From the IMG/VR virus record IMGVR_UViG_3300030385_002649, positions 62,001-126,000 of that record: DNA of 64,000 nt; one strand, written 5' to 3'. The notes beneath the pieces were generated by a model. That model had not been told where the DNA came from. It saw only the letters and a program-made list of their open reading frames with translations, and ran no database searches. The position numbers were made by a program, and so were the translations under genes. Of this stretch, positions 14,663 to 45,273 are shown piece after piece. The first letter of the stretch is position 1; each line of letters opens with the position of its first letter.

Positions 14663-14681
14663 ACTGAAGCGAGAGAGAATA

Positions 14682-15083
14682 ATGGAAGACCCAGGCCAAA
14701 TCGTCACTTTAATGGATTACCAACAGTTCTGCGACCAGAGATCGGGATACGAATTCTCAGCTCTGATTGGTCGAGGCGACCCGTGCTTACAAGTTGGGCA
14801 CGAGTTGGTTTATAATTCATTAGGTCTAGCTGGGGAAGCTGGGGAGTTCGTCGAGAAGATTAAAAAGGCCATTCGTATGGCCAACATCGACAGTTTTTAC
14901 GGTACCATCGACGATGAAAAAAGATTGGCTTGCCTAAAGGAATTAGGGGATGTGATGTATTATGTCTCTCGGTGCGCCAATCTTTTAGACTCTAGCTTGG
15001 AAGAGGTCGCTGAAATCCACAAGGTAAAGCTCCTAGACCGGATTGAGCGTGGAGTTGTTAAGGGAGAAGGCGATGACCGATAA
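14682..15083 (+). CDS. MazG-like nucleotide pyrophosphohydrolase
   Basis: GLAGEAGEFVEKIKK...KELGDVMYY...KLLDRIERGVVKGEGDDR. Confidence 0.9.
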   Translation: MEDPGQIVTLMDYQQFCDQRSGYEFSALIGRGDPCLQVGHELVYNSLGLAGEAGEFVEKIKKAIRMANIDSFYGTIDDEKRLACLKELGDVMYYVSRCANLLDSSLEEVAEIHKVKLLDRIERGVVKGEGDDR

Positions 15084-15747: not shown

Positions 15748-15950
15748 CATTGGGTGAAGTAACCAAAGCATTATCAGCTTTGAGGGATAAGCTTCCAAAC
15801 GACCCGGACTTAAAAGTTAGGTTAATTGGTCACGACGACAGTTTTCATTTCGCGCCAACTTATGAAATTCTGGTGACTGACGGGGAAGTGGTGCTCAGCG
15901 GAGTGCCACCAGAGTTGGCGAAAGCATATGGCCTCGATGAGCGTAACTGA
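15744..15950 (+). CDS. hypothetical protein (68 aa)
   Basis: Coupled ORF in the + strand run. Confidence 0.6.
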   Translation: MTLGEVTKALSALRDKLPNDPDLKVRLIGHDDSFHFAPTYEILVTDGEVVLSGVPPELAKAYGLDERN

Positions 15951-20619: not shown

Positions 20620-21719
20620 TACCAGTATATCAGCCATGGCTAACATCTAAAGAAAAGAACAACGTCCACGAAGCAATGGAGTCAGGTTGGATCTCATCAA
20701 CCGGCAAATACGTGGAGAAAGCCGAAGAGTTATTCGCAGACTTTGTAGGAACGAAACACGCTATAACAACCACCTCCGGAACTACAGCACTTCATTTATG
20801 CTTAAGAGCAATGAAAATCGAAGACCCTAAGAAATACGTTATCGTCCCGAACATTACGTTCATTGCTACCGCCTTCGCCGCCTCTTATGAAAGGATGGGA
20901 GTATTGATTGCTGAAGTTGATCCAAGAACGTGGAATATCGATCCATTACAAGTTGAACATTTCTGCTCTAATTATGATGTCGCAGCGGTAATTCCAGTAC
21001 ATTTATATGGGAATCCGGCTGACATGATTGCGCTTAAAGTCCTACAGGAAACCTGGGGTTTTGCGCTGATTGAAGACGCTTGCGAGTCTCTTGGTGCCAA
21101 AATCGGGGATAAAATGACGGGTTCTCTGGGCGACATGTCTTGCTTCTCCTTCTACGGGAACAAGACCTTCACTAGCGGAGAAGGCGGGATGGTCACGACG
21201 GATGATGACGAGTATGCTGAAAGGGCTCGGTTGCTACGAGGACAGGCTCAGGATCCGAACAAACGCTACTGGCACGTGGACGTGGGTCACAATTATCGCA
21301 TGACTAATATCCAAGCGGCTATCTTATGCGCCCAACTTGAGAGAGCGGACCAAATACTAGCCGAGAAGAAAAGAGTCTCTGACCGCTACTTGGCTAACTT
21401 GGGCGACATGGACGAATTGAAGTTCCAGAAGGTCTTCGAGGACCATGAACACTCTAATTGGTTAGTAAGCACTGAGCTTCTAACCACTAAAAATCACATT
21501 TTCTCAACTTGGATGCGGGAGAACGGGGTAGACACTAGAAAAGTCTTCTACCCGATTTCTGACATGCCGACGTATAAGGACTGTGAAACGCGAGAGCCTC
21601 CCCGAATATCGAGGAGGCTCTCTGAGCACGGTGTGTCGTTTCCATCTTATCCAGAATTGAGCAATAAAGAGGTCGACCACATTTGTGATCTAGTAAAGAA
21701 CTTTTTACTTAAGGCTTAG
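20616..21719 (+). CDS. DegT/DnrJ/EryC1/StrS PLP aminotransferase (perosamine-synthase-like)
   Basis: SGWISSTG, SGTTALHL, PVHLYG, EDACES, SFYGNKTFTSGEGG, NYRMTNIQAA. Confidence 0.93.
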   Translation: MIPVYQPWLTSKEKNNVHEAMESGWISSTGKYVEKAEELFADFVGTKHAITTTSGTTALHLCLRAMKIEDPKKYVIVPNITFIATAFAASYERMGVLIAEVDPRTWNIDPLQVEHFCSNYDVAAVIPVHLYGNPADMIALKVLQETWGFALIEDACESLGAKIGDKMTGSLGDMSCFSFYGNKTFTSGEGGMVTTDDDEYAERARLLRGQAQDPNKRYWHVDVGHNYRMTNIQAAILCAQLERADQILAEKKRVSDRYLANLGDMDELKFQKVFEDHEHSNWLVSTELLTTKNHIFSTWMRENGVDTRKVFYPISDMPTYKDCETREPPRISRRLSEHGVSFPSYPELSNKEVDHICDLVKNFLLKA

Positions 21720-22230: not shown

Positions 22231-22238
22231 TATTTTTA
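22231..22238 (-). promoter_or_regulatory. TAAAAATA putative late promoter
   Basis: 12 nt upstream of ATG22218. Confidence 0.5.
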
Positions 22239-23522: not shown

Positions 23523-23530
23523 GGTTCTCC

Positions 23531-25769: not shown

Positions 25770-26438
25770 ATGGCTATGAAATCAGAATCTAAGATATTTA
25801 TTCTCGGTTCGAGTGGGTTCGCCCATGAAATTAAGGACTATTTCTTAGAGTATTACAGAGCTAAGAGACCGAAGGGGCAAATAGCGGACCTTTACGTTAA
25901 TCATGTTGGGTTGCACGAACCTGAGTTCTATTTTGTTGGTCCTGACGGCATGTCTGTGAAAGAATATCACGCGGCCCTAAATGCCAGTCTGTCCAAGCCT
26001 ACCTTCTCTATTATGGGGTCTGGCAAGTGTTCTGTTAAGATTAAAATGCTAGAAGAGATTAGGGGACATATTATTAGTATGGTGCACCCTACCTCGCATG
26101 TTATTTCCGCTAAGATCGGTTCTGGGAGCATCATTGCCCCCGGAAGCGTGGTAGCCCCTAGAGCGGTGGTCGGAGACCATTGTCTTGTAAATTACAACGC
26201 CACAATCGGCCATGATGCTATTGTTGGAGATCTATCTGTTGTGTCTCCTAACGCGTCTATCGGAGGATCTTGTGTGCTGGGTCGCGGTGTCCATATTGGT
26301 TCTAATGCTTCGGTACGAGAAGGATTAAAAATTGGTGAAGGCGCAACGGTGGGTATGGGAGCGGTAGTAATTAAAGATGTCCCCTCTGGTGTAACCGTCG
26401 TTGGCGTGCCCGCTAGAACACTTATAAAGGAGAATTAA
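25770..26438 (+). CDS. NeuD/PglD/PerB-like sugar acetyltransferase (hexapeptide repeat)
   Basis: LGSSGFA...; left-handed beta-helix repeats; IGHD; GVPAR. Confidence 0.9.
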   Translation: MAMKSESKIFILGSSGFAHEIKDYFLEYYRAKRPKGQIADLYVNHVGLHEPEFYFVGPDGMSVKEYHAALNASLSKPTFSIMGSGKCSVKIKMLEEIRGHIISMVHPTSHVISAKIGSGSIIAPGSVVAPRAVVGDHCLVNYNATIGHDAIVGDLSVVSPNASIGGSCVLGRGVHIGSNASVREGLKIGEGATVGMGAVVIKDVPSGVTVVGVPARTLIKEN

Positions 26439-26663
26439 ATGAGTGACGAGGAAACTGTTGTTGAAGTTGATAAGTTGGCCGGAACAAAGCTCGGAGAGCT
26501 ACGTGATTTGGTCGCTAGTTTAGAAGAGGATTACCTCAAGGGTTGCGCAGGCGTTAAGACAGCCGCACGACGAGTAAGAAAAGGAGTCCAAAGCTTGGAC
26601 ACTATGCGTTCTGACATTCGTACCGAGCTTTTGTCCGCTATGAAGAAAGACAAAGAAGATTAA
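26439..26663 (+). CDS. histone H1-like Hc1 family small protein
   Basis: LRDLVASLEEDYLKGCAGVKTAARRVRKGVQSL...IRTE matches the bacterial Hc1-like pattern. Confidence 0.7.
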   Translation: MSDEETVVEVDKLAGTKLGELRDLVASLEEDYLKGCAGVKTAARRVRKGVQSLDTMRSDIRTELLSAMKKDKED

Positions 26664-27273
26664 CCTTCTACCTTACATAACTCCTGCGCTCAGTTTAGAA
26701 GACTCCATTGCTATAGTGGGTTCTAGTGGGAGACTGCTAGAAACCGATTTTGGTGATAGAATCGACAAATACGCAGAAATAGTAAGGTTTAATAGAGCCC
26801 CCGTAGAGGGCTGGGAAGCAAAAGTCGGATCTAAAACGACCCTAAGAGTTCTGAATAGGCCGACTTTTGCTTCTGCTCCCCTTCTTCGCTGGTCCGACGA
26901 CATTGAGTTCGCTAAAAAGATAAAAGATTCTAGGATCCTTGTTGGCGCTCATACTCAAGGTCTAGTAAAAGCAAGAGACAAATACGTTGACCCTAGTAAC
27001 GAATTATATGTGTTTAACCACGGAAAAGTGGTACAAGCCGCCCATAAAGCGAAATACATATTGACATCACCAACCATTGGATTCCAAATCGTCTTTCTGC
27101 TAGTTGCAGCAGGATTGAAACCCCACTTGTATGGTTTCGATTTTGAAGAAGGACGACCAAGAGACCATTATTGGCACGAACGACCACCTGGCTCTTGGTC
27201 TCACAATTTAGAAGCCGAAATGAAAGTAATGAGGGACCTAGTCTCCAAAGGAAAGGTTAATTTAATCCAATGA
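26659..27273 (+). CDS. GT29 sialyltransferase-like glycosyltransferase
   Basis: Sialylmotif L (SIAIVGSSGRLL...FGDRID....VRFNRAP..GWEAKVGSKTT), S (PTIGF...HLYGFD), III (HYWHE), VS (HNLEAE). The track start GTG26716 lies inside motif L; the frame is open to 26644, candidate ATT start at 26659. Confidence 0.85.
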   Translation: MNLLPYITPALSLEDSIAIVGSSGRLLETDFGDRIDKYAEIVRFNRAPVEGWEAKVGSKTTLRVLNRPTFASAPLLRWSDDIEFAKKIKDSRILVGAHTQGLVKARDKYVDPSNELYVFNHGKVVQAAHKAKYILTSPTIGFQIVFLLVAAGLKPHLYGFDFEEGRPRDHYWHERPPGSWSHNLEAEMKVMRDLVSKGKVNLIQ

Positions 27274-27671
27274 AGAAATTTCTAATCGCGGCTCTCGCCG
27301 CCATGTGCATCGGCACTCTCACTATAGCAGCAACGTCCCCCTCAAGGAGCGGCGCACGAAGTAGTGGTGCCGTTGATGTAGCACAAATTGCCAGCAATTG
27401 TGTTGTTACTGGCCTCATATCAGGCCCTAAAATCAAGCACAGCGCTATTGTTAACGATACGATCATATGGCAAGGAAAAATTTATGCCGTTGACGCCAAA
27501 ACCGGAAAGATCCGTGCATGGCTTAAAAGCGATAAGAAAGCTCGTACAACATCTGTCGAATTGACAAACGTTTCAGGGAAAAAAGCAACTTTTATCGTCA
27601 CGGAAAGGTTTAAAGACGACTTCGTGATCAATCATTTTTTTCATAAAGTTATTAAGCGGTCAAAACGATAA
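27270..27671 (+). CDS. secreted hypothetical protein (signal peptide)
   Basis: MKKFLIAALAAMCIG; VVTGLISGP..SAIVN weakly recalls GspC/PilP-type folds. Confidence 0.65.
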   Translation: MKKFLIAALAAMCIGTLTIAATSPSRSGARSSGAVDVAQIASNCVVTGLISGPKIKHSAIVNDTIIWQGKIYAVDAKTGKIRAWLKSDKKARTTSVELTNVSGKKATFIVTERFKDDFVINHFFHKVIKRSKR

Positions 27672-28272
27672 AAGCGATTTTCTGGCCGCTGGCTGGAGCG
27701 ATAGATTCTTTCCAGTAAGTTATCTTATGCTCTGGCAGAGCTTCTTTAATTTGTTTTCGGCCAAGATGTAAACCATTAAGATAATTGCGAGCAGCGAAAT
27801 AATTCTTGCTCTCAACGACTTTATCGGCTAACTTAATCTGGATAGCGATATGCTTGGGTGAAAGTTCCCTCCACTTTTGGGACACTTTCACCCAATATTC
27901 GTATGAAGGAAAGTGCTGGATTACGGAATAGCACAAAATCAGGTCGATCTTGTCCTCGACTTCAACATCTTCGGGGTTTCCGACATGTATCGTCTTGCAT
28001 TCCTTGCCTATAAAACGTTGAGCCTCAGTTAAACTAGCCTCACTAATATCCACAAGAGTGACATCAAAATGTTGAGAAAGCTCTTTAGCCAAAAGACCGC
28101 CGCCACAGCCCCAGTCCAAGGCAGTTTTAACTTCATCAAGATCAATCTGACTCAATACGTGAGATCTAACCCTATTGATGTGATCAGCAACCTTTTTCAT
28201 GGGCATGTGATCCACAAAGTGCTTATGGTTTAGGGTGACTTTAGTGTCCCAGTGTTTTCTTAGTTTATCCAT
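27652..28272 (-). CDS. class I SAM-dependent methyltransferase
   Basis: LDWGCGGG, LVDIS, DLILCYSVIQHF. Confidence 0.88.
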   Translation of the reverse strand: MDKLRKHWDTKVTLNHKHFVDHMPMKKVADHINRVRSHVLSQIDLDEVKTALDWGCGGGLLAKELSQHFDVTLVDISEASLTEAQRFIGKECKTIHVGNPEDVEVEDKIDLILCYSVIQHFPSYEYWVKVSQKWRELSPKHIAIQIKLADKVVESKNYFAARNYLNGLHLGRKQIKEALPEHKITYWKESIAPASGQKIAFIVLTA

Positions 28273-28951
28273 TTAATATTAGCTCAGCAATCTTAAAATC
28301 TAGTAAAGTGTCGATATCGACAGAATCTTCTATAGGCATGTGGTAGTTCGCTACTCTACCTTTAAAGAAATTACGGTCTCTGATGAATGATTCCATTCTA
28401 CGCAAATAGATCGCACCGTTTGGCCTTATAACTGAAGAATGGTCTTGAGACCTAGTGTTTCCAGTTATAAAAGGCAAAGACTGGTCGGAACAATGAACGA
28501 AACCGTCTGGATCAACTACAAGCCCTAAAGTTGGTGGAAATTCATAGTCCGTTGTACTAATAACTCCGTCTAAACTAGGGTCTTCCTCTAACAAAGCCAT
28601 GGCATCCATCACATCCACTTGACCTCGAAACGGAGCAGTGGGAAGAAACAATCCAACAACATCGTAATCATTGTACTCTTGAGATGCGACAAGATTGATA
28701 ACAGTTTCAAGGACCGTCGACTTATCTCCTGATAAAGCAGCGCTACGCTTTAAAGGAGTAACCCCTTCTATAGATCCTCCTACTTTTAGAATGTCGTCAG
28801 AGTCTGATGTTAGGATGACCGTGTGCGCTTCATCAACGACGGCCTCTAGGGTCCACTGAATTAGCGGCTTTCCTCCTAGAGGCCGGATGTTTTTGCCGGG
28901 CAACCTTTTTGACCCACCTCGGGCGGGCACTATTGCTAGGAGCTTAACCAT
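28265..28951 (-). CDS. acylneuraminate (NeuA/CMAS-type) cytidylyltransferase
   Basis: IVPARGGSKRLPGKNI, PTAPFR, NGAIY, SVDIDTLLDF. Confidence 0.92.
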   Translation of the reverse strand: MVKLLAIVPARGGSKRLPGKNIRPLGGKPLIQWTLEAVVDEAHTVILTSDSDDILKVGGSIEGVTPLKRSAALSGDKSTVLETVINLVASQEYNDYDVVGLFLPTAPFRGQVDVMDAMALLEEDPSLDGVISTTDYEFPPTLGLVVDPDGFVHCSDQSLPFITGNTRSQDHSSVIRPNGAIYLRRMESFIRDRNFFKGRVANYHMPIEDSVDIDTLLDFKIAELILNG

Positions 28952-29730
28952 TTCTGTGTTGCCAAAACCTTTTCAACTTCATCATAAGTCTTTATTAGAT
29001 TTTCGACTTTATCCAGGTACAACTGGCAGTCTCCATCAGAAACAGCCTTCCGAGGCTCCGGGTGGCATTCAGCGAAAATACCGCTATACTCATAAGCGAG
29101 AGAAGCGATCATATACTTAGCGGCAAGTTCTCTGTCCCCACCGGTAAAATCGCCCTTTTTGCGTTGAGTAGAGTGGGTGCAATCTAGGATCACTCTATCA
29201 TAGTGCTTCGACATTTCTTCGGCAGCGCCAAAATCAACGATTAATTGATTATACCCAAAGAACGTACCTCTTTCAGTGATCCAAACTTCACAGTCAGGGT
29301 TCTCGGCTTTTACCTTGCCAACAAAGTGTTTCGTGCTGTCCGGATTAATCCATTGGCCCTTCTTGATGTTCACCTTGTCGAAGCATTTTCCGGACTCGAT
29401 TAGAAGGTCGGTTTGGCGGCACAGAAAGGCTGGGATCTGGCATAGTTCGACGCCTTGGTCGGCAATGAGCTTAGCTTGATGACACTCGTGGATGTCCGTG
29501 GTCAGTCTAATTCCTGGAAACTCTTCTCGGACTTTTTCCATTAATCGGAGGGACTCGTCGATACCAGGACCCCTACCTCCATCAACTGCGGTTCTGTTGG
29601 CCTTGTCGAAAGAAGCTTTGTAGTACCAGTCTCTCCCATCCATGAACTTGGTTAGTTCTTCGGCACACTTCAAGTAAAGATGCTCGTTTTCCATGGAGCA
29701 TGGCCCCAAAATCCAGACTTTATCCGACAT
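28936..29730 (-). CDS. kdsA: Kdo-8-phosphate synthase (metal-dependent type)
   Basis: GPC, KASFDKANRT, TDIHE, QIPAFLCRQTDLL, NIKKGQ, ERGTFFGY, DCTH, ECHP...SDG; ATG29730 is the likelier start (track 29763). Confidence 0.92.
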   Translation of the reverse strand: MSDKVWILGPCSMENEHLYLKCAEELTKFMDGRDWYYKASFDKANRTAVDGGRGPGIDESLRLMEKVREEFPGIRLTTDIHECHQAKLIADQGVELCQIPAFLCRQTDLLIESGKCFDKVNIKKGQWINPDSTKHFVGKVKAENPDCEVWITERGTFFGYNQLIVDFGAAEEMSKHYDRVILDCTHSTQRKKGDFTGGDRELAAKYMIASLAYEYSGIFAECHPEPRKAVSDGDCQLYLDKVENLIKTYDEVEKVLATQKWLSS

Positions 29731-30637
29731 ATGAATCCCATCTTCTTTCAATATCATCAACAACGCCTCTTACTCTGAGTTGTTGTTCTCTTGTAACTTC
29801 GCTAAAAGGCGCCCTATTTTCAGTAGGCAGCAATTGTTTATAATTTAGAGCGGATTGCAACGCTTTATGCCATCCGATTTTCTTGAACACATTAAACAAA
29901 GGTTCTTCAAATTTAGTAACAATGTCGTGTGCTACCGCCAAATCACCAGCCGTAAACTCTTCCAAAAACCGGTCTTCAATTTCAGGAAAAATGTTTCCAA
30001 TCCCGCCAAGGAAAGTCTGCGCACCAGCGGGCCCTGTCAGCAAGAATCTCCTGCAGCTACCGCCAGCGGGGAAGATGAGAAAATCATCATCGGCCAATCT
30101 AGAAACATCATAGGCGAGCGCGAGCTTAGAACTTTCCTCTTTCATGCCTATGATGTTAGGGTGTTTTTTCAGTTTTTCGACTATTTGTGGTGTATAATCG
30201 TACATGCCGCCTAGAGCGTGTCGCATAAACATTCCGTGAATCATAACTGGCACTTCAGAACGGTCAGCGGCCCAATAGAAGTAATTCACAACGCTTTCAT
30301 CGTCGTAATACCTGTCAGGATAAAACAGGAGAATCGCATCTGGCTTGATTGCGTTAGCGAACTCTAGTTCTCTAGATAAGTGTTTGTTAGCTAATGGCGG
30401 GAGACCCATAATGAACGAACCTTGAAACTCTGAGCATAGCTCGTTCATTTCTTGGAGTTCAAATTCGTCCAGCAAGTTAAATCTTGTAGTTCCGGCTGTT
30501 GTTAGGATTGTTTTGGCTCCTTCTCTGTGAAGGTAATTGAGGTATCCTTTTATAGAGGCGCTGGACAATTCCCTTTCGCTAAATGCGGGGGGAATTGGAT
30601 ATATAACGCCTTCGCTCAATTTTTCAATGTTGGACAT
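29720..30637 (-). CDS. DHDPS/N-acetylneuraminate-lyase family class I aldolase (divergent)
   Basis: YPIPPAF, AGTT, PNIIGMKEES Schiff-base Lys; His where the family Tyr usually sits. Confidence 0.82.
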   Translation of the reverse strand: MSNIEKLSEGVIYPIPPAFSERELSSASIKGYLNYLHREGAKTILTTAGTTRFNLLDEFELQEMNELCSEFQGSFIMGLPPLANKHLSRELEFANAIKPDAILLFYPDRYYDDESVVNYFYWAADRSEVPVMIHGMFMRHALGGMYDYTPQIVEKLKKHPNIIGMKEESSKLALAYDVSRLADDDFLIFPAGGSCRRFLLTGPAGAQTFLGGIGNIFPEIEDRFLEEFTAGDLAVAHDIVTKFEEPLFNVFKKIGWHKALQSALNYKQLLPTENRAPFSEVTREQQLRVRGVVDDIERRWDSYVG

Positions 30638-31082
30638 GAGTAGCGATCACCTTTGAAACCGTCTTGGCAACTTTAATGTTTTCAAGTTTGTCATCGTAAA
30701 AGTAAATCTCATCGTATTCTTCGCTGGCGCACTTTTGAAGGACCTCAAGTTTCTTTTGAGGCACGTCTTCTCTTGTTCCTAGTCCTACGAGAATGTCGAA
30801 TAGATTTCCTTTTTTGTTTTCCGCTAGCCAGTAGGCAATTTGTTTAGCGCTTCGCCCAGATAGGATCATGTTATCACCCATTTTGCTGGTTGCGGCTACT
30901 TGTTTCCACATTTTTTGATACGGTTTGCATAAGTCCGCAACTTTGTATCCTATATCGCTATCAGCGAAACATAGGGCACCGGCTTTCGCCTCGTCCATCC
31001 AATCGTTCTCAATCAACACATCGTGAGTATTGACAAGGGTGTCATCGAAATCATATACATACAATCTTGATTTTGGATCCAT
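30624..31082 (-). CDS. HAD-superfamily phosphatase
   Basis: DFDDTL (motif I), LSGR (II), K (III), FYDD..EN (IV). Confidence 0.85.
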   Translation of the reverse strand: MDPKSRLYVYDFDDTLVNTHDVLIENDWMDEAKAGALCFADSDIGYKVADLCKPYQKMWKQVAATSKMGDNMILSGRSAKQIAYWLAENKKGNLFDILVGLGTREDVPQKKLEVLQKCASEEYDEIYFYDDKLENIKVAKTVSKVIATHVQH

Positions 31083-31136: not shown

Positions 31137-31973
31137 ATGAAAATTTCAGTAGGAATGCTAGTCGTCAACGGACGCCCCTTCATTGAAGCGCAACTGAAAA
31201 ACCTATACGACATCGCACACGAAATCGTAATCTGCGAAGGAGGAGACAAGTTCTGGCATGCCAGACATGGTTATTGGAGATCCACAGACGGCACAATAGA
31301 CATTATCAAAAACTTCCCAGACCCGGACAAAAAGATTAAACTGATCCAAAAGAATTGGAAAAACAAAAACGAAATGTCCCACACCTTCAGCGAAGGCATG
31401 ACAGGAGACATAATTTATAGCGTAGACTTAGACGAATTCATGAACCCAACCGAACTAGTGGCAGTGTGCAAAAAACTCATGACACAGCCATTCACTTCAG
31501 TCACAATCCCACATTACGTCTTTTATGGAGATTTCGAAACTCTAATGGCAATGGAGCATTCACCAACATGGGTGCAAGTACCACGCATCTTCAAAAGACA
31601 AAAGAATTCATTGATCCATCATCTCCCAATGGCATATTGGAACATGACAACAAAAACACCATACAACCCTAAGAAAATGCCCCACAAAATGGTACCAGAC
31701 GTGTTCATCTACCACTATTCTTGGGTGTATCGCAAATCCGTCAGAGACAAAATCGCATATTACGCTCATCGCATTCCTGGTTGCATTAGAAAAGACTGGC
31801 TAGACAAATACTTCGAAGACTTCGCCAGCAAAAAAGACGCTCTTCTAAAATCCAAAGAGAACATCAGACCAACAGAAGGCGCAAAACAGTTCTTGCTACC
31901 ATTTAAAGGGAAACACCCAGAAATCGTTTCTGAAATTCAGAAGGATATAGCGCTACTTGACGCGGTAAAGTGA
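31137..31973 (+). CDS. GT2-family glycosyltransferase
   Basis: MLVVNGRPFIEAQL, STDGTIDII, VDLDE, IYHYSW. Confidence 0.85.
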   Translation: MKISVGMLVVNGRPFIEAQLKNLYDIAHEIVICEGGDKFWHARHGYWRSTDGTIDIIKNFPDPDKKIKLIQKNWKNKNEMSHTFSEGMTGDIIYSVDLDEFMNPTELVAVCKKLMTQPFTSVTIPHYVFYGDFETLMAMEHSPTWVQVPRIFKRQKNSLIHHLPMAYWNMTTKTPYNPKKMPHKMVPDVFIYHYSWVYRKSVRDKIAYYAHRIPGCIRKDWLDKYFEDFASKKDALLKSKENIRPTEGAKQFLLPFKGKHPEIVSEIQKDIALLDAVK

Positions 31974-33122
31974 TAATTTCCTGCCGCCAGGATAACTGCT
32001 AATTCGTTTCACCAATTCTAAGCCATGCTTGATTAACGCCTTTTCATAAACCTCGGCTGTGTTTATATCCTCTAAGATTAAGAACTTCTTGGTAAGGTTA
32101 GCTAACAGCTTGGCAAATATTTCATGCTTAAATGTTATATGGTGCACAATCGCTAAAGCAATCACAAGTTCAGAAGAGTATCTCTCGATTTCACGATACT
32201 CATTTCTAATAAGCCTTTCGATGTCAGAATAAACAAACGTTGCCGGAAGACTCTTATCAAATCCGTCAGCGTCGTCAATGCAAGGTTCAACATAATCGAA
32301 ACCAACCGCTGATTCTACGCCGCCCTGCTGTTTATCAATAGCCAAGAAAGTGTAATACCCCTTATTACAAGCGACATCAGTTACAGTTTTGTACTCTAAC
32401 TCATCCAATAAATCAGAGACTATCTTAGCCTTTGGATTAACTTTCTCAGGATGTTTCACATCCATGATGTTAGAGTAGTTGTTGTACCAATGGTTTTTCT
32501 TCTGAGGAAGTTTAATCGTCTTAACCCAAGTTAACAATTCATCCCAAAACTCTTTACTTTGGCAATTTCCTTTATAGCGCTTGTGATGGTTAGCTAACCA
32601 TCCGCCGTGGCCGTTGACTGATTTTCCATTATATTTCGAGTATCCACCTTGGACATCTTTCTTAAAAACATAACTGTTGATGATATACGCCAGTTTTACA
32701 AAAGAATAAGAAGCATAATTCGAGTCAATTTCAGCAACCGCATTGTAGTCTAACCAAACAAATTCGCCTCTTGAGTAAGCTATGTTGCCTTCATGAATAT
32801 CAAATAAGACGATTCCTTTCTTCAATAACTCTACGTTCATCTCACAAAGGCCAACCACTATCTTGAGAGATTGCTTACATGTCAATTCTTGGATTTTTAT
32901 TAAGTGTTCAATTATAGGATGCTCAATGACAGTCCTTAATTCTTTACCCCATCTTAATTTGATGTCAGTTTTTGAATATGGTTGAGTGTATTTGCAGGAG
33001 CTAATAGCGTCTAAAAACTGCAGTTCTCTACTCTGTAAACCCCTGTACAGTTTCTCTTTGTGGTAAAACAGTGTCGATGAAGAATCAGGGTGTCTTTTAA
33101 TGTCTTTTTTAGTAAGGATCAT
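31953..33122 (-). CDS. NoeA-like protein: kinase-like N-domain + SAM methyltransferase
   Basis: FDIHEGNI...WLDY, then DVACNKGYY, GFD, ALAIVHH. Confidence 0.7.
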   Translation of the reverse strand: MILTKKDIKRHPDSSSTLFYHKEKLYRGLQSRELQFLDAISSCKYTQPYSKTDIKLRWGKELRTVIEHPIIEHLIKIQELTCKQSLKIVVGLCEMNVELLKKGIVLFDIHEGNIAYSRGEFVWLDYNAVAEIDSNYASYSFVKLAYIINSYVFKKDVQGGYSKYNGKSVNGHGGWLANHHKRYKGNCQSKEFWDELLTWVKTIKLPQKKNHWYNNYSNIMDVKHPEKVNPKAKIVSDLLDELEYKTVTDVACNKGYYTFLAIDKQQGGVESAVGFDYVEPCIDDADGFDKSLPATFVYSDIERLIRNEYREIERYSSELVIALAIVHHITFKHEIFAKLLANLTKKFLILEDINTAEVYEKALIKHGLELVKRISSYPGGRKLSLYRVK

Positions 33123-33792
33123 TTTTCAGCTTTTTCATCGTTTTTTTATCTTTAACTCTATATTTGGCATTGCGCTCTAAACTAGATTGCCTATTAGCAT
33201 ATATTCCGAGAAACTTAGGAATATGACCCCAAGAGATATCACCAGCAGCTAGTTTAGTCCAAAATAGGGCATCTCCATATATTTCAAGTCTCTCCTCAAA
33301 AAAGCCAAATTCATCGTGAAGGCTCTTCCTCCACATGGGGAAAGGACCTAGCCCATTTCCTGGTGAGTACCCTTCATCTGAACACTTATAATAGTCATGA
33401 GCGGCTTTGTACCCTTCTTGCCATGTTGGTTTATAAGCGGAAAGTTTGTAGTCGAAGTAAGCAATGTCGGATCCTTCGTCCATTTTTTCAACTTGTGCCT
33501 TATATCCATTTGGGTGCACATAGTCATCAGTATTAGCTTGAACAACATAAGGAGTGTCTGCTAATCTTATGCCAAGGTTCATGGCTGCCCACACCGAGAT
33601 TCTCTCGTTAATAATGACTTTAACAAATTGCGGGGTGTTTGTTATATTCTCTACTAGCTTTAGTTCTTTTCCTCCTGTACAATCGATCAATATGATTTTT
33701 ATTGGCACAGCGGATTCTAGTAGGTTTAATATCTTATTTCTGATGAATTTGTCAGAATTGTAAATAGAAACAATCGCTGTGGCTTTATACAT
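33109..33792 (-). CDS. GT2-family glycosyltransferase
   Basis: AIVSIYNSDKFI, AAMNLGI, ANTDD, PMWRKSLHDEFGFF...GDALFW. Confidence 0.87.
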   Translation of the reverse strand: MYKATAIVSIYNSDKFIRNKILNLLESAVPIKIILIDCTGGKELKLVENITNTPQFVKVIINERISVWAAMNLGIRLADTPYVVQANTDDYVHPNGYKAQVEKMDEGSDIAYFDYKLSAYKPTWQEGYKAAHDYYKCSDEGYSPGNGLGPFPMWRKSLHDEFGFFEERLEIYGDALFWTKLAAGDISWGHIPKFLGIYANRQSSLERNAKYRVKDKKTMKKLKNDPY

Positions 33793-33815
33793 AGTGGTCT
33801 ACCAATAAATATTTT

Positions 33816-34646
33816 ATGAAAAAGGCTGTCATCGCTATATTTCACGGTCTTGGGGATTGCATAAACGCAACTTCCATAATTAAGCCCCTGAAAGCTAAAC
33901 ACCCAAACTGCGAAATAACGTGGGTTAGTTCTAAGGCTTACTTGCCAATAGTTGAACACAACCCTCTAATTGCACACACTGAAGGTATCCCCGGAAACGT
34001 TTGGGCCGCTGACGAGCAATACAAAAACCTCAGGAAAAAACACGGAAAGTCGCTAATAGTTCCAGCCCCATATCTCAACTCATTAGCGCAAGACAAAACC
34101 CTATTGGGCTCATACAAAGAACGGATTAAAGTGATAACTGGTGGGAAAAACCTCAATTTCACGCCTGAACCGTTATTGTTTTTAACCCCTAAAGAAGTAA
34201 AAGACGTGGACGATTGGCTAGAGGAACGGAAAATAGAAAAATTCGTAATGCTTGAGGCTATTTTCACATCCAGTCAATCATTTTGGGGTAGAGCCCATAC
34301 CGATGAAGCATTAAGAATTTGCGCTGCCAAAGGCTATACTGTATTAATGACGCACAGAGAAGACGTCAACTTACATGAATATAATAAAATATGTCCAACA
34401 TTTTGTTTAGACGTTGGTTTTAGATATATGCCAGCTTTCTACAACAAATCGTCTGGTTTCATAGGGGTTAGTAGTGGTATAACGTGCGTTGTTCATACGC
34501 ACCAGTGCCGAAAAAATATACCACACCTTGAATTTGTAAGCGGAGAGCACTGGTGCACCCGTCATTACGTCAAGAAAAACAAAGTGATCAGCTTTGACAA
34601 AAAAGTTGAATCTGTAGGAAAGCTGATACAAGAGAGAATTAAATGA
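33816..34646 (+). CDS. GT9 (heptosyltransferase-like) glycosyltransferase, paralog 1
   Basis: HGLGDCINAT...KAKHPNCEITW; FIGVSSG. Confidence 0.8.
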   Translation: MKKAVIAIFHGLGDCINATSIIKPLKAKHPNCEITWVSSKAYLPIVEHNPLIAHTEGIPGNVWAADEQYKNLRKKHGKSLIVPAPYLNSLAQDKTLLGSYKERIKVITGGKNLNFTPEPLLFLTPKEVKDVDDWLEERKIEKFVMLEAIFTSSQSFWGRAHTDEALRICAAKGYTVLMTHREDVNLHEYNKICPTFCLDVGFRYMPAFYNKSSGFIGVSSGITCVVHTHQCRKNIPHLEFVSGEHWCTRHYVKKNKVISFDKKVESVGKLIQERIK

Positions 34647-35209
34647 GCCTAGAAATTGAACCGTTTGTGGAGACCAAGGATATCATCTTTAAAGGAGACG
34701 ACCCTCTTTATTTTAAAGATGATTTGAAGAGGAAATACTATAATTTCTATTTCAGTTATGGAAGGCACTTCAAACCAAGAAATATCTTCGAAATCGGAGT
34801 CAGAACAGGCTACACTGCGTATTTCTTGCTTCTAGGGTCCAAGGCTGAAAAGTTCAGAGGCATCGACCTAGAAACCTACAAAGTGAACTCTAGTCAATTG
34901 GCTATCGGGTTAATCCGAAAAGTATGCGAAGACAGTAGCGTTGCGATTGGCGATAGCCACAAGTTGACGGCTCTAGATGAGGCTTATGATCTTGTCCATA
35001 TTGATGGTGACCACAGTTATGACGGAAAGGTCCAAGACCTAGAACTTGCCTTTGGCAGCTTGAGTCCAGACGGAGTCATCGTTGTGGATGATTACAACCC
35101 TAATCTTGGCATTGAAGTTAAGAGAGCAACTGATGATTTCGCTAAAAAACATGACCTAAAGGTTACCGTTTTACCAACCTTTACCGGCCACGCGCTACTC
35201 CAGAGGTAA
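34643..35209 (+). CDS. class I SAM methyltransferase (Methyltransf_24-like)
   Basis: FEIGVRTGYT, HIDGDHSY, GVIVVDDY. Confidence 0.88.
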   Translation: MSLEIEPFVETKDIIFKGDDPLYFKDDLKRKYYNFYFSYGRHFKPRNIFEIGVRTGYTAYFLLLGSKAEKFRGIDLETYKVNSSQLAIGLIRKVCEDSSVAIGDSHKLTALDEAYDLVHIDGDHSYDGKVQDLELAFGSLSPDGVIVVDDYNPNLGIEVKRATDDFAKKHDLKVTVLPTFTGHALLQR

Positions 35210-35211
35210 GA

Positions 35212-36144
35212 ATGCAATCGAAAATTTATCCAATAGCTAACTTTCCAAACTGGAAGGCAGCTTGTGACGCAGCCCACAAATGGCTACGTGAAAGTGGTAA
35301 AGAAACCACTCTTCTTTTCGAACAAAACAGAAATCTAGGGGACACTCTACATTTAACGCCAATCATACGGCATTATAGGTTAGAAAACCCAGACGCCGCT
35401 ATTGTTTTCCTAGTAGGTAGACCATATTCTGGCGCTCACGAGTTTAATCCGGATATTGATAAAATCTTTTGTGTTCCAGTTCTTAAACCTAAAGACAGGG
35501 TTGCGCTCCGAAAACACATTATTAGTTTCAAGGATGTTACGAAGGTGATTGCTCCATCTATTTTCCCGTATGCTGACATTTGGAAAGAATTATCTTGGTC
35601 ATATGCTGACATTGCTAGTCAATATTTTGCAAACGCTGAAATTGAAGGCATTGAACCGAAAGGTGGTCGCAACTTGATTGTGAAAATCACGGATGCGGAC
35701 CGAAAATGGGCTAAAGGTTTCATGAAGAGGCATAACTTAAAAAGGAAAACCTCTTGTGTTTTAGAGTATAACTCTTATTCCGCTCAGCCTGTTTGGCGTG
35801 CGCCGAAGTTTACTAAATTTGTACAACATGCCAAGAAACATGGCATTAAGTGCATCAGCATTGCTGGTAAGAAAGAGAAAGCTATTCCTGGTACGATTGA
35901 CGCTACTGGTATTTCTTGGCGTCAATCGGTCGCTCTATTCAATGAAGTTGGTAGTTTTATTGGTGTTGGTTCGGGTCTTACGATGCTAGCTGCATCTGCT
36001 GATAATTCACCTAACATTCTGGAGATCGCAGTAGATGACCCAGTAAATATGAACGGTTGCGGCTATGCTACTAGCATCAAGATACTCAATCCTGATCCTG
36101 TCAACGTCGCTGATCATTTATGGTTTAAGGTACTAAATGGCTAA
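35212..36144 (+). CDS. GT9-like glycosyltransferase, paralog 2
   Basis: NLGDTLHLTPII...ENPDAAI; FIGVGSGLTMLAAS. Confidence 0.8.
   Translation: MQSKIYPIANFPNWKAACDAAHKWLRESGKETTLLFEQNRNLGDTLHLTPIIRHYRLENPDAAIVFLVGRPYSGAHEFNPDIDKIFCVPVLKPKDRVALRKHIISFKDVTKVIAPSIFPYADIWKELSWSYADIASQYFANAEIEGIEPKGGRNLIVKITDADRKWAKGFMKRHNLKRKTSCVLEYNSYSAQPVWRAPKFTKFVQHAKKHGIKCISIAGKKEKAIPGTIDATGISWRQSVALFNEVGSFIGVGSGLTMLAASADNSPNILEIAVDDPVNMNGCGYATSIKILNPDPVNVADHLWFKVLNG

Positions 36145-43974: not shown

Positions 43975-45272
<1,298 letters not shown>

Positions 45273-45273
<1 letters not shown>

What the first reader, a model, noticed from the sequence alone, without database searches (positions are those of the whole stretch)
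26659..31082. Eukaryote-type GT29 sialyltransferase plus a full ulosonic-acid donor operon in a phage
Seen: GT29 motifs L, S, III and VS are all present, with no TM anchor and no L/S disulfide cysteines. Facing it is a coupled operon: HAD phosphatase, aldolase, KdsA, NeuA-type cytidylyltransferase, methyltransferase. Established: synthase + phosphatase + cytidylyltransferase yields a CMP-ulosonate, the donor class GT29 enzymes use (CMP-Neu5Ac/Kdn in animals, CMP-Kdo in plants). The mix is unusual: a Kdo-type synthase paired with a NeuA-type rather than KdsB-type activator and a GT29 rather than WaaA. Inference: a self-contained pathway attaching Kdo or a modified (methylated) ulosonic acid to virion or host targets.
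Basis: partly seen in the sequence, partly recalled or inferred. Interest (0 to 1): 0.85.

Follow-up and report, generated by a model that had tools for sequence, protein, structure and literature searches.

The report
Phage sugar-acid pathway with sialyltransferase-like enzyme
A huge uncultured phage carries a stripped-down relative of animal sialyltransferases next to genes that make an activated eight-carbon acidic sugar (Kdo-like); this module turns out to be common in environmental phages, but I found no paper that studies it.

Summary
Window 26659-27273 (+) encodes a 204-aa protein that passes Pfam GT29 (E 3e-21). It has all four sialylmotifs. Its AlphaFold model (pLDDT 92) matches only mammalian GT29 structures at E<=0.001 in the PDB. 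It has no cysteine and no membrane anchor.

Convergent to it lies a five-gene overlapping operon: a capless HAD, a DHDPS-superfamily Schiff-base enzyme, a metal-type KdsA, a NeuA/PseF-type cytidylyltransferase and a SAM methyltransferase. The contig is a 370.8-kb tailed phage.

"Eukaryote-type" is misleading. The protein belongs to a large clade of ~205-aa GT29s that is mostly phage-encoded (182 clusters at 50% identity). Similar bacterial GT29s without anchor or cysteines were already published.

In 18 of 20 distinct relatives with enough flank, the GT29 lies within 8 kb of an ulosonate synthase: KdsA in 12, NeuB in 5, HMGL-like in 1. Seventeen also have a cytidylyltransferase. Two sister phages swapped a KdsA cassette for a NeuB cassette between the same GT29 and the same cytidylyltransferase.

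The donor logic is therefore well supported. The exact sugar, the role of the DHDPS-like enzyme, the acceptor and the ATT start remain open. Verdict: a new variant of a known kind, of moderately high interest.

The parts
26659..27273 (+). Minimal soluble GT29-family glycosyltransferase, 204 aa if started at ATT 26659 and 185 aa from GTG 26716. Sialylmotifs: L at nt 26704-26841, S at 27070-27138, III at 27166-27177, VS at 27202-27219.
   Evidence: Pfam PF00777 E 3.2e-21. PDB phmmer ST3Gal-I E 1.8e-10. AF2 pLDDT 92, and Foldseek gives only GT29 structures at E<=0.001. H170, Y171, H182 and E187 are invariant. No Cys and no TM segment.
27270..27671 (+). Small protein (133 aa) with an N-terminal signal-like hydrophobic segment. 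Its start overlaps the GT29 stop (ATGA). Whether it belongs to the module is uncertain.
   Evidence: ORF list. Hydrophobic residues 1-24. No Pfam or NCBIfam hit. No homologue in the related loci.
27652..28272 (-). Class I SAM-dependent methyltransferase, the last gene of the operon. Likely methylates the ulosonate or the glycan.
   Evidence: Methyltransf_25/11/12 E 1e-9 to 4e-11. Found beside GT29 in 8 distinct relatives: 7 plus L006. P0034 is a GT29-MT fusion whose MT half is 32% identical, E 2e-25.
28265..28951 (-). NeuA/PseF-type CMP-ulosonate synthetase (CTP_transf_3 cytidylyltransferase).
   Evidence: Pfam PF02348. PseF TIGR03584 scores 122 bits, below its cutoff of 205.7; KdsB models reach at most 39 bits. 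PDB NeuA 6ifd E 6e-21 over the full length; KdsB matches only the N-terminus. Within 8 kb of GT29 in 17 of 20 loci with enough flank.
28936..29763 (-). Metal-dependent-type Kdo-8-phosphate synthase (KdsA). The true start may be ATG 29733.
   Evidence: NF003543 256 bits against cutoff 242. Aquifex KDO8PS 1fwn E 1.5e-60, with the Cys/His/Glu/Asp metal ligands, KANR(T), the PAFLCRQ motif and the PEP lysines aligned.
29720..30637 (-). DHDPS/NAL-superfamily Schiff-base enzyme of unknown reaction. Lys166 is kept and His134 stands where DapA has Tyr133.
   Evidence: Pfam PF00701 45 bits. Alignments. A family profile is equidistant from DapA, NanA, KDG aldolases and KdgD. It co-varies with synthase type: the KdsA-linked clade has 100/98 support.
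30624..31082 (-). Capless HAD-superfamily phosphatase, the first gene of the operon. Candidate Kdo-8-P phosphatase, not KdsC-type.
   Evidence: Weak Pfam HAD_2/DUF2608/Acid_PPase hits. Motifs DFDDT, LSGR, K and YDD read in the sequence. ESM Atlas structure neighbours are PNKP/T5-dNMPase HADs, TM 0.74-0.82. A homologue sits in the same position in L001.
31137..31973 (+). GT2-like glycosyltransferase ('GT2a'), divergent from the operon. A frequent partner upstream of GT29 in relatives; may build the acceptor.
   Evidence: Pfam GT2 E 1.3e-5. A homologue lies within 8 kb of GT29 in 17 of 27 distinct loci.
20616..21719 (+). Perosamine-synthase/LegC-type sugar aminotransferase. Points to a second sugar in the same glycan island.
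   Evidence: DegT Pfam E 4e-102. LegC-family TIGR04181 314 bits. PDB perosamine synthetase 3bn1 E 1.6e-78. Near GT29 in L001, L010, L014 and L022.
25770..26438 (+). NeuD/PglB/VioB-family sugar N-acetyltransferase, the likely partner of the aminotransferase.
   Evidence: TIGR03570 141 bits. Hexapep Pfam.
31953..36144 (.). Rest of the soluble glycan island: a 389-aa methyltransferase-domain protein (-), GT2b (-), two proteins with weak N-terminal GT9 heptosyltransferase similarity (33816-34646 and 35212-36144, +), and a Methyltransf_24 protein (+).
   Evidence: The whole block is syntenic in L001. No TM segments.

Best explanation
This is a phage-encoded 'sialylation-like' module.

Donor synthesis, from a translationally coupled operon:
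- A metal-type KdsA condenses host arabinose-5-phosphate with PEP to give Kdo-8-phosphate. Shown by homology and active-site residues.
- The capless HAD removes the phosphate. Inferred from its position in the operon.
- A NeuA/PseF-type cytidylyltransferase activates the free sugar with CTP. The family is shown; the substrate is inferred.
- A DHDPS-superfamily Schiff-base enzyme acts in the sugar-specific part of the pathway, on the 2-keto-3-deoxy acid or its precursor. The reaction is unknown.
- A SAM methyltransferase methylates the sugar or the finished glycan. Inferred.

Transfer. The convergent gene encodes a minimal, soluble, cysteine-free GT29. It transfers the ulosonate from the CMP donor with inversion. 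By analogy with solved GT29s, the invariant His182 (motif VS) would act as base, and His170/Tyr171 (motif III) would sit at the phosphate.

Acceptor. The acceptor is a glycan built by the neighbouring soluble glycosyltransferases of a ~20-kb island. That island also makes an N-acetylated 4-amino-6-deoxyhexose. Every enzyme is soluble, no lipid-carrier, flippase or export gene is present, and the structural genes follow directly. The acceptor I favour is therefore a phage structural protein (a virion glycan). Host envelope precursors at the inner face of the membrane are the main alternative.

The confidence of 0.55 is for the donor-plus-GT29 chemistry. For the virion target alone I would give about 0.4.
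For: - GT29 family, motifs, fold and invariant catalytic residues.
- KdsA: above the NCBIfam equivalog cutoff, and all metal, PEP and A5P-phosphate residues align to Aquifex KDO8PS.
- Cytidylyltransferase: full-length NeuA/PseF-like.
- Operon genes overlap by 8-44 nt.
- Synteny. The set GT29 + DHDPS-like + KdsA + cytidylyltransferase, often with the methyltransferase, recurs in phage contigs with otherwise different neighbours: L001, L002, L004, L010, L011, L012, L014, L019, L021, L026, L030 and L032. L006 shows GT29 + DHDPS-like + KdsA + methyltransferase before the contig ends.
- Counts. Of 20 distinct loci with at least 6 kb downstream, 18 have an ulosonate synthase within 8 kb and 17 have a CTP_transf_3 enzyme.
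- Where KdsA is missing, a NeuB-family synthase takes its place. The public huge phage LR756508.1 has five GT29 paralogues plus NeuB and a cytidylyltransferase within 20 kb.
- A natural GT29-methyltransferase fusion exists.
- The DHDPS-like tree splits cleanly by synthase type, 100/98 support, matched by 0 of 500 shuffles.
- No TM segment in any island enzyme. Structural genes start at ~39.8 kb.
- Precedents. GT29 uses CMP-beta-Kdo in plants (RCKT1, PMC11288761). Virions are glycosylated by phage enzymes in mycobacteriophages (Freeman et al. 2023, as cited in PMC12619734).
Against: - There is no biochemistry on any member of the clade.
- The GT29 ORF has no canonical start before GTG 26716. 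A product started there would lack strand 1, so expression of an active enzyme depends on ATT initiation or reinitiation, or on the ATT being an assembly error.
- No A5P isomerase in the ORFs scanned. The HAD is not KdsC-like and is absent from most related loci.
- The cytidylyltransferase is below the cutoff of every NCBIfam equivalog.
- Sister phages L016 and L030 keep the same GT29 (88.6% aa identity) and cytidylyltransferase (86%) around either a NeuB or a KdsA cassette. The GT29 tree follows synthase type only weakly. The GT29 is therefore not tied to an 8-carbon donor specifically.
- The role of the DHDPS-like enzyme is unexplained, so the final sugar may not be Kdo.
- Weak GT9 (LPS heptosyltransferase) similarity of two island proteins hints at LPS-core-type chemistry, which would favour a host target.
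Confidence: 0.55

Rival explanations
1. Same chemistry, different target. The module remodels the host envelope during infection, by adding the ulosonate to LPS core, O-antigen or capsule precursors at the cytoplasmic face of the membrane. The effect would be to block superinfection or stop progeny from sticking to debris.
For: Kdo is an LPS and capsule sugar. Two island proteins have weak N-terminal similarity to LPS heptosyltransferases, whose natural acceptor is Kdo. Cyanophage papers interpret kdsA/kdsB and glycosyltransferases as cell-wall modification genes (PMC12801897). E. coli K6 has a GT29-GT107 protein predicted to make poly-Kdo capsule (PMC13171606). Peripheral LPS enzymes also lack TM helices, so one search does not exclude this reading.
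Against: The island has no flippase, polymerase, ABC exporter or polyprenyl-phosphate transferase. No integrase or lysogeny gene turned up among the window ORFs scanned. The module lies beside structural genes.
Confidence: 0.28
2. The GT29 gene in this particular phage is a decaying or poorly expressed copy (ATG mutated to ATT). The operon's product would then be used by another transferase or serve another purpose.
For: No ATG, GTG or TTG lies between the in-frame stop at 26641-26643 and GTG 26716. The closest homologue has ATG exactly where the window has ATT. The gene callers report only the 185-aa form.
Against: The 19 upstream codons are stop-free and align with the conserved N-termini of homologues. 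All invariant family residues are intact over 204 codons. AF2 models residues 1-20 at pLDDT 95-98. The ATT overlaps the stop of the preceding gene (ATTAA), a layout compatible with coupled reinitiation. AUU is a known, rare bacterial start codon (infC; from my own knowledge). Another homologue uses GTG (P0006).
Confidence: 0.12
3. The product is not Kdo but a new tailored ulosonic acid, for example a C4-epimerised, dehydrated or branched octulosonate that is then methylated. The DHDPS-like enzyme would be the key tailoring or alternative condensing step.
For: The DHDPS-like gene is as conserved in the module as the synthase and always overlaps or abuts it. It keeps the Schiff-base Lys but has an invariant His in place of the catalytic Tyr, plus an invariant GWH motif. 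This combination fits none of the NCBIfam equivalog models for this family: all five hits are far below their cutoffs. A family profile is equidistant from the solved subfamilies. It splits by synthase type. A methyltransferase is part of the module and is fused to GT29 in P0034. Some relatives add PhyH dioxygenases, sulfotransferases or kinases.
Against: The reaction cannot be deduced from sequence. The enzyme could equally be a lyase for salvage or regulation. This rival is compatible with the best explanation and refines it rather than replacing it.
Confidence: 0.4
4. The glycosyltransferases act on phage DNA (hypermodified bases) or on a small molecule, not on protein or envelope glycans.
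For: Phage glycosyltransferases that decorate DNA with diverse glycans are known (Pyle et al. 2024, as cited in PMC12619734). Nucleotide-metabolism genes (thymidylate kinase, dUTPase, MazG) flank the island.
Against: No hydroxymethylase or other base-modifying enzyme was found in the window ORFs scanned. I know of no CMP-ulosonate-dependent DNA glycosylation. GT29 enzymes are known only with glycan acceptors. The Foldseek match to T4 beta-glucosyltransferase is not significant, E 0.076.
Confidence: 0.05

Closest known systems
Bacterial GT29 sialyltransferase-like proteins (Petit et al. 2018, PMC5811610)
   Same: All four sialylmotifs, no transmembrane anchor, and no L/S disulfide cysteines. 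Placed basal to eukaryotic GT29.
   Different: Those were 23 sequences assigned to bacteria, with no function or gene context established. The present clade is mostly phage-encoded (78-91% Uroviricota in ESM Atlas clusters). Only 3 hits came from 185,579 species genomes in a pattern-limited scan. It also has a conserved donor cassette. I could not fetch their sequences, so I did not test directly whether they are the same clade.
Plant GT29 RCKT1/MGP2, putative inverting CMP-beta-Kdo transferase of RG-II (PMC11288761)
   Same: A GT29 enzyme linked to an 8-carbon Kdo donor rather than sialic acid. This is the best functional analogue for a KdsA-linked GT29.
   Different: The plant enzyme is a Golgi type II membrane protein, and plants use a KdsB-type CMP-Kdo synthetase. 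The phage enzyme is a 204-aa soluble core paired with a NeuA-type activator.
Animal GT29 sialyltransferases (ST3Gal-I 2wml/2wnf, ST8SiaIII 5bo9, ST6GalNAc2 6apj)
   Same: Fold and motifs. Motif L is about 60% identical to pig ST3Gal-I over 46 residues, by my count on the printed alignment.
   Different: Overall identity is 16-24%. The phage protein covers about two thirds of the catalytic domain (TM by target 0.42-0.54). It lacks the stem, anchor, disulfide and acceptor-side insertions.
Predicted Kdo pathways of the giant viruses CroV and Fadolivirus (PMC9614988)
   Same: A virus-encoded Kdo-8-P synthase, with a cytidylyltransferase that is phylogenetically NeuA-like in CroV. Fadolivirus, Homavirus and ChoanoV1 also have compact GT29-like proteins that match my model (E 2e-11 to 5e-13).
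   Different: Those are eukaryote-infecting NCLDVs with fused API/phosphatase genes. They have no reported DHDPS-like partner, and no link between the Kdo genes and a GT29 has been proposed.
Cyanophage S-SCSM2R kdsA/kdsB (PMC12801897; PQ898602.1)
   Same: An isolated phage with adjacent KdsA and a cytidylyltransferase.
   Different: Its activator is KdsB-like, similar to the window enzyme only over 55 N-terminal residues. It has no GT29 and no DHDPS-like gene.
Uncultured huge phage LR756508.1 (484 kb, unannotated GenBank record)
   Same: Carries GT29 homologues next to an ulosonate synthase and a CTP_transf_3 enzyme.
   Different: It has five GT29 paralogues and a NeuB-type (9-carbon) synthase, with no KdsA or DHDPS-like hit in the 30 kb examined.
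E. coli K6 capsule GT29-GT107 protein (PMC13171606)
   Same: A prokaryotic GT29 domain predicted to transfer Kdo from a CMP donor.
   Different: It is a two-domain capsule polymerase in a transporter-dependent capsule locus. It is not a stand-alone 204-aa enzyme with its own donor operon.

Membership tests
CAZy GT29 / Pfam PF00777 | Significant match to the family model above the curated cutoff | tested here: met
   76.4 bits against cutoff 23, E 3.2e-21, profile positions 58-271 of 272.
CAZy GT29 / Pfam PF00777 | Sialylmotifs L, S, III (H-Y-x-x) and VS (H-x4-E with the catalytic His) | tested here: met
   L at residues 16-61, S at 138-160, HYWH at 170-173, HNLEAE at 182-187. H170, Y171, H182 and E187 are invariant in 17 homologues.
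CAZy GT29 / Pfam PF00777 | Modified GT-A fold of solved sialyltransferases | tested here: met
   AF2 pLDDT 92.1, pTM 0.89. All 30 PDB matches at E<=0.001 are GT29 structures, TM by query 0.52-0.76; the next hit has E 0.018.
CAZy GT29 / Pfam PF00777 | Type II membrane topology and the L-S disulfide (a feature of eukaryotic members only) | tested here: not met
   No Cys and no N-terminal hydrophobic segment. The published bacterial GT29 group shares this absence, so it argues against 'eukaryote-type', not against GT29.
CAZy GT29 / Pfam PF00777 | Inverting transfer from a CMP-activated ulosonic acid | not testable with these tools
   Genomic linkage only: a synthase plus a CTP_transf_3 enzyme within 8 kb in 17 of 20 loci with enough flank.
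Canonical CMP-Kdo pathway (KdsD-KdsA-KdsC-KdsB) | KdsA: Kdo-8-P synthase | tested here: met
   NF003543 255.9 bits against cutoff 242; TIGR01362 is below its cutoff, 244 against 314. 1fwn E 1.5e-60 with metal ligands and substrate motifs aligned.
Canonical CMP-Kdo pathway (KdsD-KdsA-KdsC-KdsB) | KdsB: CMP-Kdo synthetase | tested here: not met
   KdsB models reach at most 39.5 bits against cutoffs of 155-281, matching the N-terminus only. The best matches are PseF (122 bits, below its cutoff of 205.7) and NeuA structures.
Canonical CMP-Kdo pathway (KdsD-KdsA-KdsC-KdsB) | KdsC: YrbI-type Kdo-8-P phosphatase | tested here: not met
   No NCBIfam hit. The HAD present is a capless PNKP/T5-dNMPase-like type.
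Canonical CMP-Kdo pathway (KdsD-KdsA-KdsC-KdsB) | KdsD: arabinose-5-phosphate isomerase (SIS domain) | tested here: not met
   No SIS-domain protein among the window ORFs scanned. The other 306 kb of the contig were not examined. The host is presumed to supply A5P.
NeuB-type nonulosonic acid pathway | NeuB-family synthase | tested here: not met
   None in the window. NeuB is present instead of KdsA in relatives L008, L016 and L025 and in L036.
DHDPS/NAL superfamily (class I pyruvate aldolases) | Family model match and the Schiff-base lysine | tested here: met
   PF00701 45.3 bits against cutoff 22.1. Lys166 aligns with the DapA Schiff-base Lys and is invariant in 16 phage homologues.
DHDPS/NAL superfamily (class I pyruvate aldolases) | Catalytic Tyr (DapA Tyr133 / NanA Tyr137) and membership of a characterised subfamily | tested here: not met
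   An invariant His134 stands at that position. The DapA, KdgD, HpaI and NanA equivalog models are all far below their cutoffs. The family profile is equidistant from DapA, NanA, YagE and KdgD structures.
HAD superfamily phosphatases | Four HAD motifs and the Rossmannoid fold | tested here: inconclusive
   The Pfam hits are below their cutoffs, E 0.004-0.1. Motifs DxDxT, S-G-R, K and DD are visible in the sequence. ESM Atlas structure neighbours are HADs with TM 0.74-0.82, but that tool gives leads only.

The most novel reading that the evidence does not exclude
Tailed phages of aquatic environments carry a widespread, unstudied 'viral sialylation' system. It consists of a ~205-aa disulfide-free minimal GT29 and a generic NeuA-type activator that flank an exchangeable sugar cassette: KdsA or NeuB together with a matching, novel His-containing DHDPS-like enzyme. 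The system would decorate virions with acidic, methylated 8- or 9-carbon ulosonic acids, some of them new to chemistry. This phage-borne clade may be the reservoir from which bacterial, giant-virus and ultimately eukaryotic GT29 sialyltransferases derive.
Probability: 0.3. Interest if true: 0.85.

Novelty: new variant of a known kind. Interest (0 to 1): 0.62.

Why it matters
GT29 enzymes are the sialyltransferases of animals. They are hard to produce because they are disulfide-bonded, glycosylated Golgi proteins. A natural, soluble, cysteine-free 204-aa core that may tolerate both 8- and 9-carbon CMP donors would be a useful catalyst. It would also give a minimal model for the GT29 mechanism.

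For evolution, a large phage-dominated GT29 clade bears on the open question of where eukaryotic sialylation came from.

For phage biology, acidic ulosonate caps on virions or on infected cells would be a new kind of surface chemistry, with consequences for adsorption, defence evasion and particle stability.

The conserved DHDPS-like partner is a likely new enzyme activity in ulosonic-acid metabolism.

Tried and rejected
1. Megablast of 20 kb against GenBank phages found no match. No close sequenced relative exists in that collection.
2. tblastn against GenBank phages. GT29 is found only in LR756508.1, KdsA in 4 records and the DHDPS-like protein in none. The module is essentially absent from isolated phages.
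3. I tried to assign the DHDPS-like enzyme with NCBIfam, a single-sequence PDB search and a family-profile PDB search. DapA, NanA, KDG aldolases and KdgD all score alike, so no assignment was possible.
4. I tested whether GT29 clades follow donor type. Clustering was weak: 8 changes against a shuffled mean of 11.7. The L016/L030 swap also argues against strict donor-specific clades.
5. AF2 of the GT9-like protein at 33816-34646 from a 2-sequence alignment gave pLDDT 38.5, which is unusable. No fold search was run on it.
6. The promoter and terminator scan of 25.6-31.4 kb gave counts within or near the shuffled expectation, so it was uninformative.
7. A PDB sequence search with the BNR protein found nothing.
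8. The scan of bacterial species genomes found only 3 loci, but it relies on one peptide pattern, so the true count is probably higher. The Opitutales locus L034 showed methyltransferases, GT8 and GT2 but no clear donor genes.
9. I considered a recent transfer from a eukaryote. I rejected it because identity to eukaryotic GT29s is 16-24%, whereas the compact phage-type clade has 182 clusters at 50% identity.
10. I considered a frameshift fusion with the upstream Hc1 gene. The frames differ, the GT29 N-terminus aligns with stand-alone homologues, and nothing supports a fusion.

Full report
WHAT IS THERE

The window is part of IMG/VR contig IMGVR_UViG_3300030385_002649, which is 370,804 bp long (the same length appears). 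It is a tailed phage. The window carries a virion structural protein (phrog_1645, E 8e-69), a tail protein (Tail_P2_I/phrog_48), a collagen-repeat protein, a helicase, a polymerase, an NAD-dependent ligase, a thymidylate kinase and a dUTPase. Megablast finds no relative among GenBank phages.

THE GT29 GENE

The frame 26659-27273 (+) has no internal stop. It scores 76.4 bits (E 3.2e-21, cutoff 23) against Pfam PF00777, covering profile positions 58-271 of 272. phmmer against the PDB finds pig ST3Gal-I at E 1.8e-10 and then ST6Gal1, ST8SiaIII and ST6GalNAc2.

All four sialylmotifs can be placed:
- L at residues 16-61
- S at residues 138-160
- III, HYWH, at residues 170-173
- VS, HNLEAE, at residues 182-187

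In an alignment of 17 homologues, H170, Y171, H182 and E187 are invariant. An AlphaFold2 model built on that alignment has mean pLDDT 92.1 and pTM 0.89. Its 30 PDB matches with E<=0.001 are all mammalian GT29 structures (best E 8e-12, TM by query 0.52-0.76), and the next hit has E 0.018. The protein has no cysteine. Its only hydrophobic stretch is the buried motif-S helix.

THE START CODON

One caveat concerns the start. The frame opens after a TGA at 26641-26643 and holds no ATG, GTG or TTG before GTG 26716. Gene callers therefore report 185 aa (P0001). A product started at that GTG would lack the first beta-strand, IAIVG.

Homologues start about 19 residues further upstream. The closest one (57% identical) has its ATG exactly where the window has ATT 26659. 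The 19 codons align with the homologues' N-termini, and AF2 models them at pLDDT 95-98. The ATT overlaps the stop codon of the preceding Hc1-like gene, as ATTAA.

I infer initiation or reinitiation at ATT. An ATG-to-ATT mutation or an assembly error cannot be excluded.

THE OPERON

On the minus strand, five genes overlap one another by 8-44 nt.

1. 30624-31082: a 152-aa HAD-like protein. The Pfam evidence is weak (E 0.004-0.1). However, the DxDxT, S-G-R, K and DD motifs are visible in the sequence. ESM Atlas structure neighbours are capless PNKP/T5-deoxynucleotidase-type HADs with TM 0.74-0.82. It is not KdsC-like.

2. 29720-30637: a DHDPS/NAL-superfamily protein (PF00701, 45 bits). It is discussed separately below.

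3. 28936-29763: KdsA. It is above the NF003543 equivalog cutoff (256 against 242) and matches Aquifex KDO8PS at E 1.5e-60. The Cys/His/Glu/Asp metal ligands, KANR(T), PAFLCRQ and the PEP lysines all align. It is therefore a metal-dependent-type Kdo-8-P synthase.

4. 28265-28951: a cytidylyltransferase with full-length similarity to NeuA structures (E 6e-21) and to PseF (122 bits, below its cutoff). KdsB matches only its N-terminus.

5. 27652-28272: a class I SAM methyltransferase.

The operon converges on the GT29 gene and on a small signal-peptide protein that is coupled to the GT29 stop.

THE WIDER ISLAND

The module lies in a block of soluble glycan enzymes spanning about 15.9-36.1 kb:
- a BNR-repeat protein
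- a GT1/4-like protein
- a perosamine-synthase/LegC-type aminotransferase (3bn1, E 1.6e-78)
- a NeuD-type N-acetyltransferase
- two GT2 proteins
- two proteins with weak N-terminal GT9 similarity
- further methyltransferases

None has a TM segment, and there is no flippase, polymerase, exporter or lipid-carrier transferase.

IS THE LINKAGE MEANINGFUL?

Exact-protein look-ups, an IMG/VR scan and a genome scan gave 27 distinct GT29 homologues with flanking DNA. Twelve phage contigs with otherwise unrelated neighbours repeat the set GT29 + DHDPS-like + KdsA + cytidylyltransferase. They range from 53 kb to 459 kb. Six of them also carry the methyltransferase.

Of the 20 loci with at least 6 kb downstream, 18 have an ulosonate synthase within 8 kb and 17 have a CTP_transf_3 enzyme. 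Where KdsA is absent, Pfam shows a NeuB-family synthase directly after the GT29 (L008, L016, L025). In one case the synthase is HMGL-like, with a HAD beside it.

The unannotated GenBank huge phage LR756508.1 has five GT29 paralogues, a NeuB and a cytidylyltransferase within 20 kb. P0034 is a natural fusion of a GT29 domain with a methyltransferase. That methyltransferase half is 32% identical (E 2e-25) to the window's methyltransferase over its whole length.

I could not compute a background frequency for these genes in phage DNA. As a guide, KdsA occurs in only 4 of 50,697 GenBank phage records, and the DHDPS-like protein occurs in none. The clustering is therefore far from what chance would give.

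A NATURAL EXPERIMENT

L016 and L030 are sister phages. They are 83% identical in DNA up to the last base of the GT29 gene, then they diverge, and then homology resumes. Between the same GT29 (88.6% aa identity) and the same cytidylyltransferase (86%), one phage has DHDPS-like + KdsA. The other has a NeuB fusion protein plus a DHDPS-like protein that is only 21% identical to the first.

Two trees fit this picture. The GT29 tree tracks synthase type only weakly (8 changes against a shuffled mean of 11.7). The DHDPS-like tree splits cleanly into a KdsA-linked side and a NeuB-linked side (100/98 support, matched by 0 of 500 shuffles). Relatedness alone can produce such label clustering, so the contrast between the two trees, built from the same set of loci, matters more than either tree alone.

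My reading is that the GT29 and the activator are generic for CMP-ulosonates. The synthase and its DHDPS-like partner form the sugar-specific cassette.

THE DHDPS-LIKE ENZYME

Sixteen phage homologues keep the Schiff-base Lys (K166). They have an invariant His where DapA has Tyr133, and an invariant GWH motif near the C-terminus. A family profile scores DapA, NanA, YagE-type KDG aldolases and KdgD about equally.

It should therefore bind a 2-keto acid covalently, and Kdo, Kdo-8-P and nonulosonates are all 2-keto-3-deoxy acids. I cannot tell what it does to them. Candidates are retro-aldol/aldol epimerisation at C4, dehydration, or a parallel condensation. This is the main gap in the pathway, and it is the reason the final sugar may not be plain Kdo.

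HOW IT MOST LIKELY WORKS

1. Host A5P + PEP give Kdo-8-P, by KdsA.
2. The HAD removes the phosphate to give the free octulosonate.
3. The NeuA-type enzyme activates it with CTP to give the CMP-sugar. The DHDPS-like enzyme and the methyltransferase tailor the sugar or the glycan at some point in the pathway.
4. The GT29 performs an inverting transfer, with His182 as base by analogy with solved GT29s.
5. The acceptor is a glycan begun by the neighbouring soluble transferases. A GT2a homologue lies within 8 kb of the GT29 in 17 of 27 distinct loci.

The family assignments and conserved residues are shown. Substrates, order of steps and acceptor are inferred.

All enzymes are soluble, no export machinery is present, and the structural module follows directly. 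I therefore favour glycosylation of phage structural proteins, as shown for mycobacteriophages (Freeman et al. 2023, as cited in PMC12619734). Modification of host LPS or capsule precursors at the inner face of the membrane remains a serious alternative. Weak GT9 similarity in two island proteins and the usual reading of cyanophage kds genes (PMC12801897) point that way.

COMPARISON WITH WHAT IS KNOWN

The protein is a GT29 by every sequence and fold criterion. It lacks only the eukaryote-specific anchor and disulfide. Petit et al. (PMC5811610) already reported bacterial GT29s with exactly these absences and placed them basal to the eukaryotic enzymes. 'Eukaryote-type' is therefore not apt.

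The clade is large. A profile search of 1.84 billion representatives finds 182 clusters at E<1e-30, and roughly nine in ten of the best 150 are 183-243 aa long. ESM Atlas clusters of 473, 131, 65 and 78 members are 78-91% Uroviricota. BFVD holds compact GT29-like proteins from uncultured Caudovirales. It also holds them from the giant viruses Homavirus, ChoanoV1 and Fadolivirus. Fadolivirus also has a predicted Kdo pathway (PMC9614988).

Other precedents:
- A GT29 using CMP-Kdo is supported genetically in plants (RCKT1, PMC11288761). It is predicted for E. coli K6 (PMC13171606).
- KdsA paired with a NeuA-like activator is predicted for CroV.
- The one isolated phage with kdsA (S-SCSM2R) has a true KdsB-like partner and no GT29.

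I found no paper that describes phage GT29s or this module.

VERDICT

The system is best filed as a new variant of known kinds: prokaryotic or viral GT29 plus a virus-encoded ulosonate pathway. It is not a eukaryotic import.

Three things make it interesting: the size of the unstudied phage clade, the exchangeable sugar cassette with its unassigned DHDPS-like enzyme, and the practical appeal of a minimal, disulfide-free GT29.

Nothing was left out for safety reasons.

Noticed in passing
window 22236-25033 (-): The phage encodes both glyoxylate-shunt enzymes side by side: isocitrate lyase (PF00463, E 6e-104) and malate synthase (E 5e-47). They sit in the middle of the glycan island. The same pair is present in the related 293-kb phage L001.
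   Followed up: partly
window 26439-26663 (+): A 74-aa Hc1-type histone H1-like protein (PF07432, E 5e-10), a family I know from Chlamydia. It is also present in L001. The only bacterial genomes on longer contigs with close GT29 hits were Opitutales (Verrucomicrobiota) MAGs. Together these hint at a host in the PVC group.
   Followed up: partly
window 26659-26663: The GT29 reading frame appears to start at ATT, overlapping the stop of the Hc1 gene (ATTAA). The closest homologue has ATG at the aligned position.
   Followed up: yes
window 15928-17010 (+): A BNR_2 (sialidase-like beta-propeller) protein, E 1.2e-13, at the edge of the island. It may be a glycosidase for ulosonic acids. It had no PDB or NCBIfam match.
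   Followed up: partly
window 27270-27671 (+): A 133-aa protein with a signal-peptide-like N-terminus, translationally coupled to the GT29 stop (ATGA). It has no family match and no homologue in related loci.
   Followed up: partly
window 33816-34646 and 35212-36144 (+): Two proteins whose first ~50-65 residues weakly resemble LPS heptosyltransferases (GT9), E 3e-5 and 7e-4. The AF2 model of the first was unusable, pLDDT 38.5.
   Followed up: partly
L016 8613-12206 vs L030 8613-10274: Sister phages exchanged a NeuB-fusion + DHDPS-like cassette for a DHDPS-like + KdsA cassette, exactly at the GT29 stop codon. The flanking GT29 and cytidylyltransferase stay 86-89% identical.
   Followed up: yes
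L036 (LR756508.1 307069-337641): A public 484-kb huge phage has five GT29 paralogues, three of them in tandem, plus NeuB and a cytidylyltransferase within 20 kb. The record is unannotated.
   Followed up: partly
P0034 (L037 4172-5401); P0254: Natural fusions of the mini-GT29. One is fused to the operon-type methyltransferase (409 aa). The other is fused to a dTDP-4-dehydrorhamnose 3,5-epimerase domain (350 aa).
   Followed up: partly
L001 16181-16924; L016 13805-15618; L005 8127-8900: Related modules carry an APS kinase or sulfotransferases, which suggests that some of these phage glycans are sulfated.
   Followed up: no
L005 4171-6315: An epimerase/GDP-mannose-dehydratase-like gene of 714 aa has a faint intein-splicing hit between two halves of the domain. 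It may be an intein-containing sugar dehydratase in a phage.
   Followed up: no
window 43975-45273 (-): A collagen triple-helix repeat protein (E 5e-10) among the tail genes. It is a plausible fibre and a candidate glycosylation substrate.
   Followed up: no
window 12825-15083 (+): A UV-damage endonuclease UvdE (E 7.5e-48), a protein with weak PHD/RING-finger hits, and a MazG pyrophosphohydrolase lie just upstream of the island.
   Followed up: no
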